DNA of 20,869 nucleotides, from the sequence record NC_005830.1, one strand, 5' to 3'. The notes under the pieces were generated by a model that was given only the letters and a program-made list of their open reading frames with translations, ran no database searches and was not told the origin of the DNA. The first letter of the stretch is position 1. Every line of letters starts with the position of its first letter. Positions 10 to 20,858 of the stretch are shown one piece after another. A program made the translations under genes and the position numbers.

Positions 10-262
10 GCATGTGGTTTGCGGTTTGAGGTTCGCACTTGTGATTTTTGTTCAGTTCAGTGTGGTAATTGTTTTTTGTTCTTGTGTGTGTTTTTATCTG
101 TTTGTTTTTGTGTTTTTCTGTTTAGTTCTGTTCTTGTTCTGTTTTTGAATTTATTTCTGGACCTAAAGTGTTTTAATTGTTTTTTGTTCTTGTGTGTGTT
201 TTTATCTGTTCTGTTCAGTTAAGTTCAGTTTTGTTTCTGTTCTGTTTTGTTTTTGAATTTTG
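10..262 (+). repeat. Left subterminal T/G-rich array of short degenerate repeats (TTGTT, CTGTT, CAGTT)
   Basis: Low-complexity sequence that includes a perfect 37-bp direct repeat at 66-102 and 174-210. Confidence 0.9.
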
Positions 263-290: not shown

Positions 291-340
291 GAAAATCCTT
301 TTAAACCTAGAAAGCGGGTATGAAAATGGGGAAAAAAATG
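291..340 (+). promoter_or_regulatory. Early-type BRE-TATA plus GGGG leader cassette (ORF150)
   Basis: GAAAATCCTTTTAAA...AAAATGGGGAAAAAAATG; 47 nt from the first G to the ATG. Confidence 0.75.
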
Positions 341-790
341 AGTGAAGACCTAACTTTTGAAGAAAGGTACCAAAAAGACATAAGAAGAAGAGAGTCATTT
401 TTTTCAGACTTTCACCTAACTGATTACTCAAACTATTTGGGTATGAAAGATACAGATGAACTGCAAACAAAGGGTTATGTGGTATATATTGCAGACGGGT
501 ACATTACAGAATACATATTAAGATATTTTGATAAACAGTATGCAGTAATTGATGATTACCTATATTATGTATTAATCGTTAAGTTTATGGGCGGGTTCAA
601 AGTATTTATATATGAGTACAGTTATGGTAAGTTACTAGAGTCAGATTTGTCTGATTATTCAATATTTGAGAAAAGTATAGCAGACATAAACAGTCTAATT
701 TCAAGTTGTTATCATATTGCCCTATCTTTGTCTCACACATTTTTCAATATTACAGAGTACTACACTAAGTATATCTCTAATTTCAAGTGA
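338..790 (+). CDS. Hypothetical protein, 150 aa (ORF150)
   Basis: The ORF track starts at 320. The ATG at 338 follows the conserved GGGGAAAAAAATG leader. Tyr-rich and acidic. Confidence 0.85.
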   Translation: MSEDLTFEERYQKDIRRRESFFSDFHLTDYSNYLGMKDTDELQTKGYVVYIADGYITEYILRYFDKQYAVIDDYLYYVLIVKFMGGFKVFIYEYSYGKLLESDLSDYSIFEKSIADINSLISSCYHIALSLSHTFFNITEYYTKYISNFK

Positions 791-800
791 TTTTTTTCTT
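791..800 (+). terminator. Archaeal oligo-T terminator
   Basis: T7 run immediately after the ORF150 stop codon. Confidence 0.6.
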
Positions 801-872
801 CTTTCTGTTTGTCTTCTGTTTCTGGTCTGATTCTGTTATTCTGATTGTCTGTTTGTCTGACTTCTGGTAACA

Positions 873-922
873 GAAAGCCTTATATACTGTTTCTTTGTAT
901 ATAAAAATAGGGGAAAAAAATG
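873..922 (+). promoter_or_regulatory. Early-type promoter/leader cassette (ORF190)
   Basis: GAAAGCCTTATATAC...AAAAATAGGGGAAAAAAATG; 47-nt spacing. Confidence 0.75.
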
Positions 923-1492
923 GAAAAGAAAGTAGATAAAAATGAGTTCTTGAATATGGTACTCTTGAAACTAGAAGAAGGTAAGGTTTTTTTAGGTAAA
1001 CATGGGTTAAAAATCAACATAAGTCTAGATAACGTTAGGATAAATAGTGGTTCAGTGTCTATAACAGTAGGAGACATATATCTTAAAGTTGATATGAGAA
1101 ACAGTGAACTTGTGTTAAATGACTTAGAAAATCATGAAGTCTACATTTACAGTTACGCAAACGATGAGGTCAAGATAAGGATTACACAAAATACGTTTTA
1201 CCTGTACATGCAGATAGATGAATTGAAACCAGTAACACAAGAGGTAATGCTGAGAGCAATAGAGGCATTAAGGATACCGTTTAGCAAAAGAGAAGGGCTT
1301 AGAATCGATATTGATTTAACGCAATATCATGAGATTGAGTACACTAGTGAAGATGGATTGCAGTTACGTTATGGTGTTGATGATATACAGATTAAGGACG
1401 ATAAACTTGTAATGAATGGTTTGGCAATAGACATACTAAATAATGACTGGTTTATATCATTTGAGAAAAACGTAATGAGCATGATTTTGTAA
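920..1492 (+). CDS. Hypothetical beta-rich acidic protein, 190 aa
   Basis: Long ORF with the cassette leader and a downstream T-tract. Confidence 0.88.
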   Translation: MEKKVDKNEFLNMVLLKLEEGKVFLGKHGLKINISLDNVRINSGSVSITVGDIYLKVDMRNSELVLNDLENHEVYIYSYANDEVKIRITQNTFYLYMQIDELKPVTQEVMLRAIEALRIPFSKREGLRIDIDLTQYHEIEYTSEDGLQLRYGVDDIQIKDDKLVMNGLAIDILNNDWFISFEKNVMSMIL

Positions 1493-1494
1493 TC

Positions 1495-1502
1495 TTTTTT
1501 TT
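1495..1502 (+). terminator. Oligo-T terminator
   Basis: T8 run just after the ORF190 stop codon. Confidence 0.6.
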
Positions 1503-1613
1503 CTCTGTTCTTCTTTCTTCTGTCCTCATTTGTCTGTTTGTCTGTTTTATTATAAGGGCTGTTATTGTACTAGTTTATCTGATTTATGGGCATAAAAACG
1601 GGGAAAAATATGG

Positions 1614-1667
1614 GAAAAGTTTTTATACTTTCTCTGACTAACTGATAAACAGGGGTAGAGAAAAGTG
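1614..1667 (+). promoter_or_regulatory. Early-type promoter (ORF99 operon)
   Basis: GAAAAGTTTTTATAC...AAACAGGGGTAGAGAAAAGTG. Confidence 0.65.
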
Positions 1668-1964
1668 GACACACATGAGTTTCATAAATTGTTGATAAAG
1701 GTGGTTGATTTGTTTTTAGAAGACAGGATAAAAGAATTTGAGTTGAAGCTGAACACAACACTTGACGAATTAGAGTTTGAAGAGTTAATCGGAAAGCCTG
1801 ACAGTTCAAATTCAGCAGAAAATAACGGTATTTTTATTGATGAGTATAGCTATGATGCTAGTGAGAATGCTATTAAAAAATTGTTTGTTGAGTATGTGAG
1901 ACAGCCTGAGTTCAAATATACAGTCTTATCTATTAAAGGTGTAAACGATTGGGTGAGAGAGTGA
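1665..1964 (+). CDS. ORF99, conserved acidic protein of unknown function (rudivirus/lipothrixvirus family)
   Basis: GTG start; sequence matches my recollection of AFV1-99. Confidence 0.85.
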   Translation: MDTHEFHKLLIKVVDLFLEDRIKEFELKLNTTLDELEFEELIGKPDSSNSAENNGIFIDEYSYDASENAIKKLFVEYVRQPEFKYTVLSIKGVNDWVRE

Positions 1965-2167
1965 GAATAAAACTATATGTACCGTATCAAGATATCAGAG
2001 ATAACTGTAAAAGAAGAACTGACTTCTACTCTGACTTTGAGATAAGTGTAGATGACATACAGTACATTAGTTTCAGTGAACTGATAAGATTGGTAAAAGC
2101 AAATCCAGAGTACATAGAACAGTTAAAGAAAGTGCTAACAGAATGGGACAAAGGTGAGAGTGGATGA
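1961..2167 (+). CDS. Hypothetical protein, about 68-72 aa
   Basis: The GTG at 1961 overlaps the ORF99 stop and follows a GGTGA SD at 1952-1956. An alternative TTG start lies at 1949. Confidence 0.75.
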   Translation: MRIKLYVPYQDIRDNCKRRTDFYSDFEISVDDIQYISFSELIRLVKANPEYIEQLKKVLTEWDKGESG

Positions 2168-2637
2168 GTGAAATGAGTGTGGTTGAATATGAAGTAGTTT
2201 CAAAGAACCTTACTAGTAAGATGAGTCATGAGTTACTGTTTTCAGTCAAAAAGAGGTGGTTTGTAAAGCCGTTTAGGCATGACAGACAATTAGGCAAACT
2301 ACATTACAAACTGTTACCAGGCAATTACATCAAATTCGGTCTATACGTATTAAAAAACCAGGATTATGCGAGGTTTGAGATTGCATGGGTACATGTAGAC
2401 AAAGACGGAAAGATAGAAGAAAGAACAGTGTACAGCATTGAGACATATTGGCATATCTTCATTGACATTGAAAATGACTTAAATTGCCCTTACGTTTTAG
2501 CGAAATTTATTGAAATGCGTCCTGAATTTCACAAGACTGCATGGGTTGAGGAGAGTAATTACAGTATTGCAGAAGACGATATACAGATGGTAGAGAGTAT
2601 CAAGCGATATCTGGAGAGAAAGATAGCAAGTGATTGA
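2164..2637 (+). CDS. ORF157, viral nuclease (AFV1 ORF157 family)
   Basis: ATGA-coupled to the upstream gene. The nuclease call rests on recalled literature for AFV1 ORF157, not on a motif. Confidence 0.75.
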   Translation: MSEMSVVEYEVVSKNLTSKMSHELLFSVKKRWFVKPFRHDRQLGKLHYKLLPGNYIKFGLYVLKNQDYARFEIAWVHVDKDGKIEERTVYSIETYWHIFIDIENDLNCPYVLAKFIEMRPEFHKTAWVEESNYSIAEDDIQMVESIKRYLERKIASD

Positions 2638-2809
2638 GGTTTCTAGTATGGAAAGGGTCTATCAGTGTCTAAGATGCGGGCTAACATTTAGAACTAAGAA
2701 ACAGTTAATCAGACATCTGGTAAACACTGAAAAAGTAAACCCGCTATCAATCGATTACTATTATCAGTCTTTCTCTGTCTCTCTGAAAGATGTAAACAAG
2801 ATTATCTGA
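2630..2809 (+). CDS. 59-aa zinc-finger DNA-binding protein (AFV1p06-like; C-x2-C-x12-H-x4-E)
   Basis: Manual translation: MIEVSSMERVYQCLRCGLTFRTKKQLIRHLVNTEKVNPLSIDYYYQSFSVSLKDVNKII. Absent from the supplied ORF track. Confidence 0.9.
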   Translation: MIEVSSMERVYQCLRCGLTFRTKKQLIRHLVNTEKVNPLSIDYYYQSFSVSLKDVNKII

Positions 2810-2814
2810 ATATC

Positions 2815-2820
2815 TTTTTT
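2815..2820 (+). terminator. Oligo-T terminator
   Basis: T6 run plus pyrimidine tract after the zinc-finger gene. Confidence 0.5.
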
Positions 2821-2850
2821 CTCTCTGTTTCTCCTTCTGGTCTGATAACA

Positions 2851-2899
2851 GAAAACTTTTTTAAGCCTGACGCGGTATTATTTAATGGTGAAAAAAATG
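2851..2899 (+). promoter_or_regulatory. Early-type promoter/leader cassette (ORF95 operon)
   Basis: GAAAACTTTTTTAAG...GGTGAAAAAAATG; 46-nt spacing. Confidence 0.7.
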
Positions 2900-3184
2900 G
2901 GAAATGAAACGGGAAAGGAAACAAGTGGAAAAGAACAAGATAAAGTGAAAGATGTGATAATACGGTTAGTAGAAGAAGACGGTAGAATAGCAGTCTATCT
3001 GGTACAAGGACTGAATACAGAATTTCTAGGATACGCTGATGAGATACAATTGGCTAAAGAAATTGCAAAGTTGAACAAGTTCATAAGCATATGGAGACTG
3101 AATCCCTTAGACCACAGATTAAGGGATTACTTAAGACAAGAGATTATAGAGAGACTGGTAAGAGTCATGGCATACATGATGTGA
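2897..3184 (+). CDS. Hypothetical protein, 95 aa; paralog of the 75-aa ORF at 20314-20541
   Basis: The ATG at 2897 follows a GGTGA SD (the track starts at 2885). Three blocks of similarity to ORF75. Confidence 0.85.
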
Positions 3185-3188
3185 GAGT

Positions 3189-3368
3189 ATGAGGAAAGTT
3201 GCATTTAAAGTGAATGAAGACTTGTTAGAACTGCTAGACAAGTATGCTATAAAACACGGATTGAGTAGAAGTGAAGTAATCAGAGAGGCAATAAAAAACA
3301 TGGTGAAGGAAGAGTTAGAGAAAGACAGTATAATAGTGGCAAGAGTGGAAAAAATTAGGATATGGTGA
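3189..3368 (+). CDS. Ribbon-helix-helix (CopG-like) regulator, 59 aa
   Basis: [39 protein letters not shown]... shows the RHH pattern. Not in the ORF track. Confidence 0.88.
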
Positions 3369-3373
3369 TTCTA

Positions 3374-3607
3374 ATGGAAAGAATGCTACTGAAAAAACTG
3401 TATGCCTTGGACGATATACAAGTTGGTATATTCGAGGTAGAGAGCAAAATACAGTACTATATTGCAGTGCTAATAGACGGCTTAAACTTTGAGGTTTGGG
3501 GAAAGGGGAAAACCCCATATGAGGCGATTATTAACGCTTCAGAAAAGTGGAGCAATAGTTTCGGGGGCTTCAACCCCTTCCGTGAAGCTCTGCGTTTGAG
3601 GTGGTAA
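3374..3607 (+). CDS. 77-aa protein with a HicB-like N-terminal-domain motif
   Basis: The ATG follows a GGTGA SD at 3364-3368. [14 protein letters not shown] resembles the HicB-like G-x-T-x-x-E-A-x-x-N-A motif. Confidence 0.7.
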
Positions 3608-3608
3608 T

Positions 3609-3755
3609 GTGAGAGTTGTAACATTTAAGGCAGAAGAAGAACTGTTAGCATTACTGGACAGATATGCAATGAACAAAGGGCTGTACAGGAGTGAAGTAAT
3701 CAGAGAGGCAATAATAGAATTTCTTAGCGTTAGGGGGTACAAAGTTAATGGCTAA
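3609..3755 (+). CDS. Second RHH regulator, 48 aa
   Basis: GTG start; [48 protein letters not shown]. Not in the ORF track. Confidence 0.85.
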
Positions 3756-4248
3756 TTTTTTCAGGACTGCAAAGGCGTTAATCATAATACCAGATGACAT
3801 ACCAGGTCGTCTGGTTATCTTCAAGCTTCACGGTAGGCTAGTCTATAGATATCAGACTATCAGACGTATAATCACCAAAACAGGAAGAGAGGCTTACGTA
3901 TATAGGTTTGCTAGACTACCATGTACAAAAAAGCCGAATGAACCAGATTTTCAGATATGTATAATATCAGAGTTAGAATACTGTGAGCCAGAAATAGGCG
4001 GTAGAAGAAACAAACATCCGTTGTCTTTCAGATACACAAGTTGTCAGCCATTCTATCTTAAGGATTATGATAGTCTGGACAGTCTGTACAAGGCAATGGA
4101 CAGTACTCTTGATTCCTTAATCATAGAGTATAGTGACTTTATATCAGGTTTTGGCGAGAGTGTTGAAGACCTAGCACATGAATCAACGCAAATAAATGTA
4201 TGCAATCTACTAACTGATGAAGAGGAGATAAGTCATGACTATTGTTAA
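3748..4248 (+). CDS. Hypothetical protein, 166 aa (basic N-terminal half, acidic C-terminal half)
   Basis: Overlaps both neighbouring genes in the operon. Confidence 0.85.
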
Positions 4249-4669
4249 TATTCTTCGTGTTGATATTGACCAACCGTTTGATTATCTGGACAAGCAGTTT
4301 TACGGGAATCTGACACTCAGAAAGTTACTAGTCTGGAGAATATTCTATGTAAGTAAAGTCTTCAGTCAGCATGTAGAAAGTCTGGAGTTCAGAAAGTCAT
4401 TGAGTGGAAATATTCATGTTCTTGTTACTATCAATCCAGGCATACAGAGAACACTAGTACCGTTAGCTCAGTTTCTCATGGGTGATGATATAATGAGGAC
4501 TTTCATGAACTTGAAGAGGAAAGGAAAGGGAAACTATTTGTTCAGTTACGGTAATACAGATGCTGACAGATTTTTAGCGGAAAGGCAAATTGCAAGGAAA
4601 CAGAAAGCTTTAAATAGGAAAAAAAGTAAAACTAAAAACGGGGAAAAAAATGGGGAAGGAAAAAGTTGA
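4235..4669 (+). CDS. ORF144, putative minimal AEP-superfamily (primase-like) protein
   Basis: ORF is solid. The function is inferred from LRVDID (D10, D12), SLSGNIH (H61) and GDD-x2-R motifs. Confidence 0.55.
   Translation: MTIVNILRVDIDQPFDYLDKQFYGNLTLRKLLVWRIFYVSKVFSQHVESLEFRKSLSGNIHVLVTINPGIQRTLVPLAQFLMGDDIMRTFMNLKRKGKGNYLFSYGNTDADRFLAERQIARKQKALNRKKSKTKNGEKNGEGKS
4603..4652 (+). promoter_or_regulatory. Early-type promoter/leader cassette embedded in the 3' end of ORF144
   Basis: GAAAGCTTTAAATA...AAAAACGGGGAAAAAAATG; 47-nt spacing. Confidence 0.75.
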
Positions 4670-4997
4670 AGAGAAAAAGGAAAATAAGTCAGGTGTAAAG
4701 GAAAAAATCCAAAACTGGATAGCAGACGCAAAGAAAAGAGGTACGTGGCAAACACTGTTACTGAAGCAGATAGGAAACACAAGGCTAAACGTAGCAGTAA
4801 CGCCAGACGGAAGTGCATTATTGAAGATATTCATAAACAGACCGCAAAACGGTATCATATTCAGTTTAAACGAGTTAGAAGACATAAAGAAGGCAATAGA
4901 AATAGCAGAGAGCATAAAATCTGAGTTAGAGTCTATTCCAGAGTTTAAGAACGCCAAAGTTAGCCTAAAGACTCAGAAAGGTGTGCTAGATGAGTAA
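4650..4997 (+). CDS. ORF115, putative ssDNA-binding protein (PC4/ThermoDBP-like)
   Basis: Beta strands followed by NGIIFSLNELEDIKKAI, located next to ORF135. Confidence 0.5.
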   Translation: MGKEKVEEKKENKSGVKEKIQNWIADAKKRGTWQTLLLKQIGNTRLNVAVTPDGSALLKIFINRPQNGIIFSLNELEDIKKAIEIAESIKSELESIPEFKNAKVSLKTQKGVLDE

Positions 4998-5397
4998 GTT
5001 TGCACAGAAAATTGAAAAATTAAAGAAGTCATTGCTAAACAGATTAGAAGAACAGGATATAGTGTCTGTTGATGTAGCTAGTAAAGGTTCAGTGTACATA
5101 GGTTTACTAGGATTCAGGCAGGACGATAGAAAAGCAGTTACCCTGTATGTTAGAGGACAGAATCCGAAAAAGAAACTTTACGTCAATCTCGATGAAGTGG
5201 ACAACTATATCAGAGTATTTGAGTTCTTAAAGAAGCACAAAGAGGAACTTGAAAAGATAGTAGGCAAACCGCCAAAATCGACTTCTGCACCAGACATTGA
5301 TGAACTAGAAGAGGAGCCAGATGAAGAAACGGAAGAGAAGTCAGAAGAAAAGACAGAGAAGAAAAAGAAAGAATCAGAAGACGAAGATGAGCTATGA
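4990..5397 (+). CDS. ORF135, putative ssDNA-binding protein with an acidic C-terminal tail (SIRV2 gp17-like)
   Basis: Compact N-terminal domain plus E/D/K-rich tail, directly upstream of the ATPase as in the rudivirus gp17-18-19 cluster. Confidence 0.6.
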   Translation: MSKFAQKIEKLKKSLLNRLEEQDIVSVDVASKGSVYIGLLGFRQDDRKAVTLYVRGQNPKKKLYVNLDEVDNYIRVFEFLKKHKEELEKIVGKPPKSTSAPDIDELEEEPDEETEEKSEEKTEKKKKESEDEDEL

Positions 5398-6674
5398 CAT
5401 TCGTTGAAGATTTTTTGTCAAGTTACACTTTTTCTTACAACCCTAGAAACTTAGAGACCCTGTTACTAGGTTTGGGCATTAAAGATACAGAAGGGGCAAA
5501 AAGAGCGATAAGGTTAGGGTCTGACCCAAAGTATTTCCAGGTGTATATGATGTACAATGACAAAGCCAAACTGATAACTAGGATAATGCAGTTCAATGCA
5601 GACAAATATGGTATGAAACTTACGTTTCAGAACGGTCTCTCTGTTAAGCTATCGCCGAAAGTCCTAGCGGAATCAGTAGATGACTTCTTTGACATGTTAG
5701 ACCAATGGTTCATAGTGTCAGTAGAAAAGGATGAGATTGGTGTTTTGGTGAAGTCAGTAAAACCAGTGAAACCTAAGACTGATGTGGATATAGATGAAGA
5801 CTTCTTGAAGAAAGTAGAAGCTGAAGTACCACTGTACATCTTTCTGATAGCGTCTTTTGGGTATAAGATACCAGACAAGACAACATATAACGTGTACAGA
5901 GACTATATACTAGGTCGATTCATACATTTGTTCAGACCGAGTAGTAATATTCCGTTACATATAGCAGAGTTGAGCAATAGAGGAACTGGAAAGACTACAA
6001 CTTTTCTCATTATGAGGGACTTTCTAGGATACTATTATACTACAGAACCACCTACATTGCCGTTTCTGGTCTATGATTCAAAGACTAAACAGCAGGGGAT
6101 TGTAGCAACAAAGAACGGGATAATTTTCGATGAAGTCCAAGACTGGTCTGGAGATAGAGTAAAGGCTATTCTGTCAGTATTAGACACAGGTATGGAGAAC
6201 TGTACATGGAACCGTTCGGTATCTGGAAGTAGTGAGACTATTAACAGGTGTATTCCAATAGTGTTCTTAGGCAATGAAAACTATATTAGCATAGACTTCT
6301 ACCAGGCACCGAGTAATTTACAGCAATATATAGCAGAAAAGTCATCAATGCTAGAAGAAGTACTGCTAAACAAGTATCCAGATATCTTTCCTACCAAAGC
6401 GTTCTTGGACAGGTTTGCCAGAATTGCAGTAGGCAATAATTTCCCTTCATTTACAGAGACTATAACGGGCAAAGTACTGTTCCCTACCATTCTGAGAAAG
6501 TTAATCAGAGAATTACAGAAACGTATAGACAGAGAGTCACCGTTAAACAATGACTATGAAGGAAGGACAAGAAGGAGAGTAGAAGATGTAGGACAAGTGC
6601 TAAAGGGGTTAGGGGTAGACTTAGATAAACCAGAACTAGTATACGCGTGGACAAGGTTTGTAGGGGTGCAGTGA
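5394..6674 (+). CDS. ORF426, AAA+ ATPase of BrxL/Lon-like (MCM-clade) type; probable SIRV2 gp18-like annealing ATPase
   Basis: Walker A SNRGTGKTT, T-x-P-x-L-VYD segment, Walker B GIIFDEVQ, arginine-finger-like FLDRF. Confidence 0.8.
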   Translation: MTFVEDFLSSYTFSYNPRNLETLLLGLGIKDTEGAKRAIRLGSDPKYFQVYMMYNDKAKLITRIMQFNADKYGMKLTFQNGLSVKLSPKVLAESVDDFFDMLDQWFIVSVEKDEIGVLVKSVKPVKPKTDVDIDEDFLKKVEAEVPLYIFLIASFGYKIPDKTTYNVYRDYILGRFIHLFRPSSNIPLHIAELSNRGTGKTTTFLIMRDFLGYYYTTEPPTLPFLVYDSKTKQQGIVATKNGIIFDEVQDWSGDRVKAILSVLDTGMENCTWNRSVSGSSETINRCIPIVFLGNENYISIDFYQAPSNLQQYIAEKSSMLEEVLLNKYPDIFPTKAFLDRFARIAVGNNFPSFTETITGKVLFPTILRKLIRELQKRIDRESPLNNDYEGRTRRRVEDVGQVLKGLGVDLDKPELVYAWTRFVGVQ

Positions 6675-6725
6675 CAAAATGTTTTTATATCCCGAAAAAT
6701 AGATAAGATTTGGTGAGAGAAAGTG
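6674..6725 (+). promoter_or_regulatory. Early-type promoter (ORF74-Cas4-ORF65)
   Basis: GTTTTTATATCC at 6681-6692 is identical to the core at 20582-20571 (- strand). GGTGA SD at 6712-6716. Confidence 0.6.
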
Positions 6726-6947
6726 GAGAAAGCAGAAAAATACGTAAAAATCGGGATAGACGGATACACATACAATCTGTTCAAGTCAGAGAAAGACAAA
6801 TGGAGAAAGAAGACGGGAAGGGTTCTAGATAACAGTGATATACTGCTAATCTTAGTGCAGAGGAGCAGAGCATTGGAATGTCTGGAGAATGATAAGAGCA
6901 AAACGGTGGAAGAATGCAAGAAGGAAACAGCTTTACAGAATTACTGA
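6723..6947 (+). CDS. Hypothetical basic protein, 74 aa
   Basis: GTG start with SD, lying between the ATPase and the Cas4-like gene. Confidence 0.75.
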
Positions 6948-7585
6948 AAAACATAATAGCAGAAACTTTTAAGGAACTCTCAAAGCCTGTTGATAAACTA
7001 CAATACCTCACGGTTACACAGATTTCCCAATGCCCAAGACGAAGTTGGTATGAGCTGAAAAAAGGGGGATTAGATTTAGCAAGTGAATATGCAGACATGG
7101 GGATGGTGTTTCATAGTCTGTTAGAGGACGCAGTAAAAAACAGACAAGAACTAGGTAAATGTTACACAGAAGTAGATATAGCAAAACCATTTTACGGTAT
7201 TGAAATAAGGGGAAGAATAGATACACTGTGTATCAGCAGAGATGCATACAGAATAATAGAGTTCAAGACAACAAACATGCAAGATGGGTTCAAAGGGATA
7301 GAGACAGCACATTTGAGGCAGGTTAGTTTATACTGGTACCTGACAGGAAGCCAACCAATGCGGAAGGAAATTTATCTGGTTTATATAGACAGAAAGACTG
7401 GTGAAGTCAAGGTAATCAATATGAGACATGAAAGTATACTGAAAAAGAGAGAACTAGGAAACAGAATAAAGTATCTGGTCAGAAGCTTCAATGAAAACAA
7501 AGTACCAAAGCCAGAACCAGGTAGGAGTTGTATATTCTGTCCATATAAGACGGTGTGTAAAGCATGGAAACGGTCACGGTATTGA
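6914..7585 (+). CDS. cas4: Solo Cas4-like PD-(D/E)xK nuclease with a four-Cys Fe-S cluster
   Basis: ISQCPRR, G-x-x-FH, GRID, IIEFKT, QVSLY and C-terminal [10 protein letters not shown]. Confidence 0.9.
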
Positions 7586-7761
7586 GAAAAAAGGGAAAAA
7601 CATATCTGATAGTCAGTGTGAATGGATTTCTGACAGTAACAGACTGTAAAAGTCTGAACAAATTGCAAAAAGAATTGCTAAGACAAGCATACAGAAAAAC
7701 AAAGAATGAGGAAGAGAAAGCGTTAATTAATGTCTGTTTACAGAGTCGTTTAAATCGTTAA
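7564..7761 (+). CDS. Hypothetical basic protein, 65 aa
   Basis: Overlaps the 3' end of the Cas4-like gene; plausible composition. Confidence 0.7.
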
Positions 7762-20595: not shown

Positions 20596-20858
20596 TTAAA
20601 CAGAACTGAACTAAACAGAACTGAACAGAACTATATAACAATAACATAACACAAAACTGAACTTAACAGAACTGAACAGATACAAACACTATAACAGAAC
20701 TAAACAGAATAGAACAGAGCAGAACAGAAACAAACAACAAAACAACACCAAACTGAACAGAACTATACAGAACAGATAAAAACACCAAACAGATAATAAC
20801 ACAACACACCACACCAACCACCAACACCACAACCATCACCAAAACCACCACCAATATA
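20596..20858 (-). repeat. Right subterminal A/C-rich array (AACAG, AACTG, ACC), the mirror of the left array
   Basis: Repeated AACAGAACTG units grade into CCA/CAC units towards the end. Confidence 0.9.

What the first reader, a model, noticed from the sequence alone, without database searches (positions are those of the whole stretch)
4235..7761. Extended recombination-dependent replication module: primase-like, SSB x2, BrxL/MCM-clade ATPase, Cas4-like nuclease
Seen: contiguous co-oriented overlapping genes. Known: the SSB / annealing ATPase / Cas4-like trio is described for SIRV2 gp17-19. The ATPase motifs match the BrxL/Lon-like family without a protease domain, with Ser replacing the first Walker A Gly. 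Inference: with ORF144, ORF115, ORF74 and ORF65 added, this could be a self-contained resection-invasion-priming machine acting on the repetitive ends and recruiting the host polymerase.
Basis: partly seen in the sequence, partly recalled or inferred. Interest (0 to 1): 0.68.

Follow-up and report, generated by a model that had tools for sequence, protein, structure and literature searches.

The report
AFV1 recombination gene cassette with neighbours
This stretch of the archaeal virus AFV1 holds the already-known three-gene DNA-recombination cassette of rod-shaped and filamentous archaeal viruses, plus four small neighbouring genes that travel with it only in AFV1's closest relatives, one of which is a real lead to a missing replication enzyme.

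Summary
The window is the complete genome of Acidianus filamentous virus 1 (AFV1, 20,869 bp). The seven genes lie exactly where stated, co-oriented and mostly overlapping, and all are under purifying selection.

**Core cassette.** ORF135, ORF426 and ORF223 are the AFV1 version of the characterised SIRV2 gp17/gp18/gp19 cassette:
- ORF135 is a gp17-type ssDNA-binding protein with an acidic tail.
- ORF426 is a BrxL-type (MCM-like) AAA+ ATPase without a Lon domain; its Walker A has Ser where BrxL has Gly.
- ORF223 is a Cas4-like four-cysteine nuclease.
This part is already known.

**Extra genes.**
- ORF115 is probably a diverged, tail-less copy of the SSB; the evidence is fold-level only.
- ORF144 belongs to a separate family found in beta-, gamma- and deltalipothrixviruses and in unclassified virus contigs. 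D-x-D, D, R and R are invariant and S, G, H, Q are nearly so. The pattern is primase-like, but no fold or HMM test confirms a primase.
- ORF74 and ORF65 are specific to the genus Captovirus and of unknown function.

**Co-conservation.** The extra genes accompany the cassette only within captoviruses. Rudiviruses have the trio without ORF144. No Cas4 or SSB was found in SIFV2, AFV2 or SBFV3, which carry ORF144-like genes. The "extended machine" is therefore not supported as a conserved module.

The scan's first-stage notes on this same window also flag ORF144 and the tandem SSBs.

The parts
4235..4669 (+). ORF144: small ferredoxin/RRM-like domain protein with a basic C-terminal tail. It belongs to a family shared with beta- and deltalipothrixviruses and unclassified archaeal virus contigs. 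It carries an AEP-like motif pattern (D10-x-D12, S55..G58-N-x-H61, D85..R88..R95).
   Evidence: Family and invariant residues. AF2 model with pLDDT 67 and only generic ferredoxin-like matches. AEP-like leads. No primase HMM hit in AFV1.
4650..4997 (+). ORF115: probable diverged gp17-like (non-OB) ssDNA-binding paralogue. It lacks the acidic C-terminal tail and is found only in captoviruses.
4990..5397 (+). ORF135: gp17-family ssDNA-binding protein. It has a core of about 95 aa plus a disordered acidic tail ending in EDEL.
   Evidence: phrog_7201 E 1.8e-7. blastp to SIRV2 gp17 E 0.004. Alignment with six rudiviral gp17 homologues, including the shared acidic tail. PF21017 (weak) on the L006 homologue.
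5394..6674 (+). ORF426: BrxL-type AAA+ ATPase, orthologue of SIRV2 gp18. Walker A at S194-T201, Walker B at D246-E247, no Lon protease domain.
6675..6722 (+). The only intergenic gap in the block. It has an A/T-rich TATA-like stretch (6682-6689) and GGTGA (6712-6716) ahead of the GTG start of ORF74. It may be an internal promoter.
   Evidence: Sequence read directly. This is inference only.
6723..6947 (+). ORF74: small captovirus-specific protein inserted between the ATPase and nuclease genes. Function unknown.
   Evidence: Singleton PHROG. 76-85% identical in captovirus contigs, dN/dS 0.06-0.10. No homologue in rudiviral cassettes.
6914..7585 (+). ORF223: Cas4-like PD-(D/E)xK nuclease, orthologue of SIRV2 gp19. 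Cysteines C40, C206, C209, C215; D103; E116-x-K118; Q136..Y140.
   Evidence: TIGR00372 E 2e-16, phrog_1706 1e-51, PADLOC Cas4 8e-20. blastp to gp19 6e-16. Motifs.
7564..7761 (+). ORF65: small captovirus-specific protein at the end of the co-oriented block. Function unknown.
   Evidence: Singleton PHROG. 78-92% identical ORF in all six captovirus contigs, although it was called as a gene in only one. dN/dS 0.05-0.16.

Best explanation
The region is a stretch of AFV1's long co-directional left arm.

**Functional core (4990-7585).** This is the captovirus version of the gp17-gp18-gp19 recombination cassette of rudiviruses.
- Shown by homology: ORF135 is a gp17-type non-OB ssDNA-binding protein with a disordered acidic tail. 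ORF426 is a BrxL/MCM-like AAA+ ring ATPase without a protease domain. ORF223 is a Cas4-like iron-sulfur nuclease.
- Inferred from the SIRV2 biochemistry: the nuclease resects DNA ends or flaps 5'->3'. The SSB coats the ssDNA and recruits the ATPase through its tail. The ATPase anneals or remodels ssDNA. Together they support recombination-dependent restart, termination or maturation during strand-displacement replication of the linear genome.

**ORF115** is most likely an old, tail-less duplicate of the SSB gene. It may pair with ORF135.

**ORF144** is a separate entity: a compact ferredoxin-like domain of a lipothrixvirus-wide family. Its invariant D-x-D, D, R, R and near-invariant S, G, H suggest a metal-dependent enzyme acting on nucleotides or nucleic acids, with an AEP-like motif pattern. 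It sits beside the cassette only in captoviruses.

**ORF74 and ORF65** are genus-specific accessory genes of unknown role.
For: - Identity of the genome.
- Trio homology and motifs.
- ATPase and Cas4-like gene adjacent in all seven rudiviruses examined, with the gp17-like gene adjacent or nearby in six of them (SIRV2, ARV1, SRV, MRV1, SSRV1, ARV3).
- The cassette is described in the literature as SSB, annealing ATPase and ssDNA nuclease (PMC5062984; bioRxiv 10.1101/2020.01.16.907410).
- BrxL is MCM-like, and type-4 BrxL lacks the Lon domain.
- The full block ORF166 to ORF65 is conserved in order in six captovirus contigs, with dN/dS 0.04-0.17.
- ORF115 fold match to SIRV1 ORF131.
- ORF144 family distribution and invariant residues.
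Against: - No AFV1 protein has been assayed; function is transferred from proteins that are 23-33% identical.
- The ORF135-ORF115 complex prediction gave only weak support: score 0.37, best control 0.00, a range in which passes are more often wrong than right.
- The ORF426 score is far below the NCBIfam BrxL equivalog cut-off (51 against 329 bits).
- ORF144's structure model is mediocre (pLDDT 67).
Confidence: 0.72

Rival explanations
1. All seven genes form one self-contained resection, invasion and priming machine. ORF144 acts as the primase, two SSBs are involved, and the machine works on the repetitive genome ends and recruits the host polymerase.
For: - Tight, overlapping, co-oriented genes conserved as a block in captoviruses.
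- ORF144 has an AEP-like motif pattern and language-model similarity to Pfam AEP-like.
- AFV1 has no other recognisable replication protein (PMC4889955).
- The genome ends are pentamer-repeat arrays.
Against: - The extra genes are not co-conserved with the trio outside one genus.
- The whole left arm, 338-7761, is co-oriented, so adjacency is weak evidence.
- No AEP appears in four fold searches, and there is no primase HMM hit on AFV1.
- ORF74 and ORF65 have no recognisable function.
Confidence: 0.12
2. The cassette mainly serves to attack the host or counter its defences rather than to replicate the virus. The Cas4-like nuclease would degrade host DNA, and the BrxL-like ATPase would interfere with host BREX-type or replication factors.
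For: - Degradation of the host chromosome has been proposed for SIRV2 gp19 (cited in PMC6105669).
- ORF426's nearest cellular relatives are defence proteins.
Against: - The nuclease is linked to an SSB with a partner-recruiting tail, and the SIRV2 homologue has reported annealing activity; both fit recombination.
- The cassette is treated in the literature as a set of core proteins conserved across rudiviruses, which underscores a critical role in viral reproduction.
Confidence: 0.08
3. ORF115 is unrelated to gp17. It would be a small alpha/beta protein with a gelsolin/ADF-like arrangement and some other, non-DNA role, and ORF144 would be a non-catalytic ferredoxin/ACT-like binding domain.
For: - VIA-align ranks gelsolin-like domains above ORF131 for ORF115.
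- hhalign probability is 2%.
- ORF144's fold matches are generic: ACT, ribosomal protein S6, IS200 TnpA.
Against: - ORF131 is the best of 350,542 PDB chains by Foldseek. It aligns over 91% of its length at 20-25% identity, against 5-8% for gelsolins, and the gene lies next to a true gp17 homologue.
- In ORF144, three Asp and two Arg are invariant and Ser, Gly, His are nearly so, across relatives that are 18-37% identical. That points to catalysis rather than plain binding.
Confidence: 0.25

Closest known systems
SIRV2 gp17-gp18-gp19 operon (Guo et al. 2015, J Mol Biol 427:2179; the paper is not held here and is summarised in PMC5062984)
   Same: The same three protein families in the same order and orientation. 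The SSB has an acidic disordered tail. The ATPase is 33% identical over 95% of its length. The nuclease is 31% identical and has all Cas4 motifs.
   Different: - AFV1 has a second, tail-less SSB-like gene (ORF115) upstream.
- A 74-aa gene and a 48-nt gap are inserted between the ATPase and nuclease genes.
- A 65-aa gene follows the nuclease gene.
- The virus is an enveloped captovirus (Ungulaviridae), not a rudivirus.
BrxL of BREX systems (PDB 8emc; Pfam PF13337; NCBIfam TIGR02688 short form, TIGR02653 long form)
   Same: Homologous AAA+ core from Walker A to sensor 1. The best NCBIfam hit is the roughly 450-aa TIGR02688 model, about the size of ORF426; whether that model corresponds to the Lon-less type-4 BrxL was not checked. 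BrxL is the top PDB profile hit.
   Different: - Virus-encoded, with no BREX neighbours.
- Walker A has Ser/Thr where BrxL has the first Gly.
- The score is far below the equivalog cut-off.
- The N-terminal domain was not compared.
CRISPR-associated Cas4 (TIGR00372)
   Same: A PD-(D/E)xK core with an N-terminal Cys and a C-terminal C-x2-C-x5-C cluster.
   Different: A stand-alone viral gene with no CRISPR context. It scores 60.2 bits, just under the 65-bit cut-off.
Archaeo-eukaryotic primases (AEP); Pfam PF24387 'AEP-like'
   Same: ORF144 and its relatives keep a D-x-D, an S-x-x-G-x-x-H and a later Asp, in the same order as AEP motifs I-III (the motif definitions are from my own knowledge). 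They show language-model similarity to PF24387 clusters, 0.90 and 0.96. Nine of 13 betalipothrixvirus homologues give a weak hit to phrog_1829 'DNA primase'.
   Different: - The domain is only about 100 residues and forms a single ferredoxin-like unit.
- No AEP appears in the PDB, BFVD or Atlas fold searches.
- There is no significant HMM hit.
- The third Asp is modelled between two helices rather than on a strand.

Membership tests
gp17-type viral SSB (PF21017 / phrog_7201): ORF135 | Sequence homology to SIRV gp17/ORF131 over the core domain | tested here: met
   phrog_7201 E 1.8e-7. blastp E 0.004. Colinear alignment with six rudiviral homologues.
gp17-type viral SSB: ORF135 | Disordered acidic C-terminal tail. 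In SIRV2 this tail mediates binding to gp18 (from memory of Guo et al. 2015). | tested here: met
   Residues of about 100-135 are rich in E, D and K and end in EDEL. Rudiviral tails end in EEEF or EDEF/L.
gp17-type viral SSB: ORF135 and ORF115 | Binds ssDNA | not testable with these tools
   Needs EMSA or fluorescence anisotropy with purified protein.
gp17-type viral SSB: ORF115 | Sequence homology to the family | tested here: not met
   No blastp hit to ORF135. hhalign E 0.02, probability 2%. No PHROG cross-hit. Atlas similarity to PF21017 only 0.78.
gp17-type viral SSB: ORF115 | Same fold as the solved SIRV1 ORF131 (2x5g, 2x5t) | tested here: inconclusive
BrxL ATPase family (PF13337, TIGR02688): ORF426 | Significant match to family models across the AAA+ core | tested here: met
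   TIGR02688 E 7e-14 over residues 65-357. PADLOC BrxL 2e-9. PF13337 on close homologues. 8emc is the top PDB profile hit, E 0.036.
BrxL ATPase family: ORF426 | Reaches the curated equivalog score and lies in a BREX locus | tested here: not met
   51.3 bits against a 329.3-bit cut-off. The gene is in a virus next to SSB and Cas4-like genes. It is therefore a relative of BrxL, not a BrxL.
MCM-like AAA+ clade: ORF426 | Clade-specific structural inserts (pre-sensor-1 hairpin, helix-2 insert) and a hexameric ring around DNA | not tested
   No structure was predicted for ORF426 because both jobs went to ORF144 and ORF115. The MCM link rests on published BrxL structures (PMC10164562).
Cas4 nucleases: ORF223 | PD-(D/E)xK motifs plus four cluster cysteines | tested here: met
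   D103, E116-x-K118, Q136..Y140, C40, C206, C209, C215. Cas4 HMM E-values from 2e-16 to 8e-20.
Archaeo-eukaryotic primase superfamily: ORF144 | Motifs I (D-x-D), II (s-x-H) and III (D) conserved in order | tested here: met
   D10, D12, D85, R88 and R95 are invariant, and S55, G58, H61, Q79 are at least 90% conserved, in 16 sequences down to 18% identity. The assignment to AEP motifs is by resemblance only.
Archaeo-eukaryotic primase superfamily: ORF144 | AEP catalytic fold, or a significant profile match to AEP families | tested here: not met
   - No AEP in Foldseek PDB, VIA wide, BFVD or Atlas searches.
- No PDB or NCBIfam profile hit.
- phrog_1829 reaches only E 0.004 on betalipothrixvirus homologues and gives nothing on AFV1.
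- A comparison with the Pfam PF24387 model itself could not be run.
Archaeo-eukaryotic primase superfamily: ORF144 | Template-dependent primer synthesis | not testable with these tools
   Needs an enzyme assay.
HUH endonucleases: ORF144 | H-U-H motif plus a conserved catalytic Tyr | tested here: not met

The most novel reading that the evidence does not exclude
The ORF144 family is the missing virus-encoded replication initiator of lipothrixviruses. It comprises AFV1 ORF144, AFV2 ORF116, the C-terminal domain of the 265-aa SIFV gp30/SIFV2 gp27 proteins, and small homologues on unclassified archaeal virus contigs. It would be a minimal, roughly 100-residue AEP-like or palm-like nucleotidyl transferase. 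In captoviruses it has come to sit directly upstream of a duplicated SSB and the recombination cassette, giving a priming-plus-recombination unit for strand-displacement replication.
Probability: 0.18. Interest if true: 0.75.

Novelty: new variant of a known kind. Interest (0 to 1): 0.4.

Why it matters
AFV1 and AFV2 are among the few dsDNA viruses in which a global survey found no typical replication protein (PMC4889955). AFV1 is reported to replicate by an unusual strand-displacement, recombination-linked route.

Placing the known SSB/ATPase/Cas4 cassette in AFV1 is not new. It does fix which proteins to assay.

Two pieces are new.
- **A likely SSB duplication.** One copy has lost the partner-recruiting tail.
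- **A conserved motif-bearing small domain (ORF144 family) across lipothrixvirus genera.** This is a concrete, cheaply testable candidate for a viral priming or initiation enzyme.

Showing that the seven genes are not co-conserved prevents a genus-level gene order from being read as a machine.

Tried and rejected
- **The search for related loci** with ORF426 in viral contigs found nothing. Relatives came instead from the search for homologous proteins and the look-up of encoding contigs.
- **PDB sequence searches** found nothing useful with ORF135 or ORF426 alone, or with the ORF144-family profiles A4 and A7.
- **NCBIfam** gave no hit for any ORF144-family member.
- **Split-gene idea rejected.** I tested whether ORF166 plus ORF144 is a split version of the 265-aa betalipothrixvirus protein. 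ORF166 shows no similarity to its N-terminal part, nor to the genes upstream of other ORF144-like genes.
- **No conserved neighbours.** Genes next to ORF144-like genes elsewhere (SIFV2 gp26 and gp28, AFV2 ORF286b, L019, L021, L023) and the small genes inside rudiviral cassettes (ORF90, ORF84, ORF74a, gp20) show no relation to ORF115, ORF74, ORF65 or ORF166.
- **Rep-Arvir (PMC13107129)** was considered for ORF144 and rejected. It has a TBP-like fold and a catalytic Tyr.
- **HUH endonuclease** was rejected because no Tyr is conserved.
- **Complex prediction, ORF135(1-100) with ORF115(12-115):** weak support only. Score 0.37, best control 0.00; 51 of 78 solved complexes and 2 of 108 mismatched pairs reach the mark; at 0.60 or under only 5 of those 78 solved complexes passed, as did all 4 mismatches that passed (of 180, the harder ones counted). 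The runs agree in at least 68% of contacts and partner pLDDT is at least 66. I make no binding claim from it.
- **Bacterial promoter and terminator scan** is uninformative for an archaeal virus.
- **Last word-index search with ORF115** found only captovirus homologues.

Full report
**What the window is.** The 3,527-base stretch is 100% identical to Acidianus filamentous virus 1 (Captovirus AFV1, Ungulaviridae, Ligamenvirales), and the window equals the whole 20,869-bp record.

| Gene | Coordinates |
|---|---|
| ORF144 | 4235-4669 |
| ORF115 | 4650-4997 |
| ORF135 | 4990-5397 |
| ORF426 | 5394-6674 |
| ORF74 | 6723-6947 |
| ORF223 | 6914-7585 |
| ORF65 | 7564-7761 |

They are co-oriented and overlap by 4-34 nt, apart from one 48-nt gap before ORF74. 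That gap holds a TATA-like stretch and a GGTGA ahead of the GTG start. The left edge of the finding is arbitrary. ORF166 overlaps ORF144 by 14 nt, and all 18 annotated genes from 338 to 7761 are on the + strand. In this genome, co-orientation and overlap are therefore weak evidence of shared function.

**The genes are real.** Metagenome contigs of six AFV1-like viruses (L006-L011, up to 19 kb) carry the same eight genes, ORF166 to ORF65, in the same order at 68-92% protein identity. ORF65 is present in all six, although it was called as a gene in only one. Pairwise dN/dS against three of the contigs is 0.04-0.17 for every gene, with synonymous sites near saturation.

**The known core.**
- *ORF426.* It has full-length orthologues at 28-33% identity in every rudivirus in the phage collection, and partial ones in the deltalipothrixviruses AFV2 and SBFV3.
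  - It matches BrxL models (TIGR02688 E 7e-14, PADLOC BrxL 2e-9). Close homologues carry Pfam BrxL_ATPase. A profile of the viral family finds solved BrxL (8emc) as its best PDB hit, although only at E 0.036.
  - Its Walker A is S-N-R-G-T-G-K-T. Ser or Thr occupies this position in all twelve viral homologues aligned, where BrxL has Gly. Walker B is D246-E247. There is no Lon domain.
  - Published work describes BrxL's ATPase as MCM-like and notes that type-4 BrxL lacks the Lon domain (PMC10164562, PMC12839542).
  - The older "Lon protease" label for ORF426 and SIRV2 gp18 appears in PMC4124505.
- *ORF223.* It is a Cas4-like nuclease with all RecB motifs and four cluster cysteines, and it is 31% identical to SIRV2 gp19.
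- *ORF135.* It is a distant but consistent member of the gp17 SSB family: phrog_7201 E 1.8e-7, blastp E 0.004, and a colinear alignment with six rudiviral proteins. It shares their acidic tail with a hydrophobic last residue.
- *Literature.* The papers read here describe this cassette as an ssDNA-binding protein, an annealing ATPase and an ssDNA nuclease with a proposed role in recombination or genome maturation. From my memory of Guo et al. 2015, which is not held here, the gp17 tail mediates binding to gp18.

**ORF115.** No sequence method links it to anything outside captoviruses. An AF2 model (pLDDT 73, built from only four close sequences) has an alpha-beta3-alpha-beta layout.
- Its best Foldseek match among 350,542 PDB chains is SIRV1 ORF131, the solved gp17 homologue: E 0.011, probability 1.00, 21-25% identity.
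- The gene sits directly upstream of a true gp17 homologue. I read ORF115 as a probable old duplicate that lost the acidic tail, at about 60-65%.
- A complex prediction with ORF135 gave only weak support (0.37 against a best control of 0.00).

**ORF144.** This gene is not an orphan.
- *Family and distribution.*
  - A profile search of 1.84 billion representatives found six small relatives of 102-126 aa at E 2e-5 to 5e-4.
  - tblastn and a profile scan then found the same domain in the 252-267-aa "conserved lipothrixviral protein" of all betalipothrixviruses (C-terminal part; SIFV2 gp27, phrog_12608) and in AFV2 ORF116.
  - None was found in SIRV2, ARV1 or SRV, nor in any rudivirus by tblastn.
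- *Conserved residues.* Across 16 sequences down to 18% identity, D10, D12, D85, R88 and R95 are invariant, and S55, G58, H61 and Q79 are nearly so. That set suggests a metal-dependent enzyme.
- *Leads towards a primase.*
  - The order D-x-D, S..G..H, D resembles AEP motifs I-III.
  - The language-model search puts Pfam PF24387 "AEP-like" clusters among the neighbours of ORF144 (0.90) and of SIFV2 gp27 (0.96).
  - Nine of 13 betalipothrixvirus members weakly hit phrog_1829 "DNA primase" (best E 0.004) across the D-x-D to His segment.
- *Evidence against a primase.*
  - No profile hit to PDB or NCBIfam exists.
  - phrog_1829 does not match AFV1 at all.
  - The conserved domain is half the size of a canonical AEP core. 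In betalipothrixviruses it is preceded only by a 60-aa domain and a variable Gly/Arg-rich linker.
- *Other readings.* HUH endonuclease is excluded by the lack of a conserved Tyr. Rep-Arvir is a different fold.
- *Verdict on ORF144.* "Primase-like" is a fair description of the motif pattern but is not an established membership. I put a real priming or initiation enzyme at about 20%.

**Is it one module?** The distribution says no.

| Virus group | Trio (SSB / ATPase / Cas4) | ORF144-like gene |
|---|---|---|
| Rudiviruses | present; SSB sometimes displaced by one to three genes or inverted | none found |
| Deltalipothrixviruses (AFV2, SBFV3) | ATPase only; no Cas4 or gp17 found | AFV2 ORF116, about 22 kb from the ATPase gene; none found in SBFV3 |
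| Betalipothrixviruses | ATPase not found in any; no Cas4 or gp17 found in SIFV2, the one tested | present, next to transcription-regulator genes |
| Captoviruses | present | present, adjacent |

The genes next to ORF144-like genes elsewhere are unrelated to ORF115, ORF74, ORF65 or ORF166. Negative searches in single genomes are not proof of absence, and the tool says so, but the pattern is consistent.

**Mechanism.**
- Shown by homology: an SSB with a recruiting tail, a BrxL/MCM-like ring ATPase, and a Cas4-like nuclease.
- Inferred from SIRV2 biochemistry: resection, ssDNA coating, and ATPase-driven annealing or remodelling, serving recombination-dependent steps of strand-displacement replication or maturation of the linear genome.
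- The genome ends are pentamer-repeat arrays at 59-260 and 20597-20854. AFV1's D-loop and strand-displacement replication (Pina et al. 2014) is cited only through PMC4889955; I could not read the paper.
- Action on the termini and recruitment of the host polymerase remain speculation.

**Verdict.** The core is already known. The extension is a genus-level gene arrangement and not a demonstrated machine. Two modest new points stand: a likely tail-less SSB paralogue, and a conserved, motif-bearing ORF144 family that spans lipothrixvirus genera and deserves an enzyme assay. First-stage notes of this scan on the same window (s1-165098, s1-166114) raise the same two points; they are not independent evidence.

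Noticed in passing
window 3748-4248: ORF166 overlaps ORF144 by 14 nt. It is conserved at 75-88% identity with dN/dS of about 0.06 in all captovirus contigs, so the block starts further left than the finding states. No homologue or family was found for it.
   Followed up: partly
window 6675-6722: This is the only intergenic gap in the block. It has a TATA-like run at 6682-6689 and GGTGA at 6712-6716 ahead of ORF74's GTG start. ORF74, ORF223 and ORF65 may be a separate transcription unit.
   Followed up: no
L017:5602-6399 (SIFV2 gp27) and alignment A6: The betalipothrixvirus 252-267-aa proteins have three parts: a conserved 60-aa N-terminal domain, a highly variable Gly/Arg-rich linker (about residues 60-130), and the ORF144-like domain. 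That domain carries an H-I-H where AFV1 has N-I-H.
   Followed up: partly
L019:1536-2286: On an unclassified archaeal virus contig with a weak Fusello_VP2 hit, the ORF144-like gene is again overlapped by 14 nt by an upstream 151-aa gene. That upstream gene is unrelated in sequence to ORF166.
   Followed up: partly
window 59-260 and 20597-20854: The terminal arrays of pentamer repeats (TCTGT/TGTTC on the left, AACAG on the right) mirror each other at the two genome ends.
   Followed up: no
L013, L014, L015 (MRV1, SSRV1, ARV3): In hoswirudiviruses an 84-90-aa gene sits between the gp17-like SSB gene and the ATPase gene. The cassette therefore tolerates small inserted genes at different junctions in different lineages, as with ORF74 in AFV1.
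   Followed up: partly
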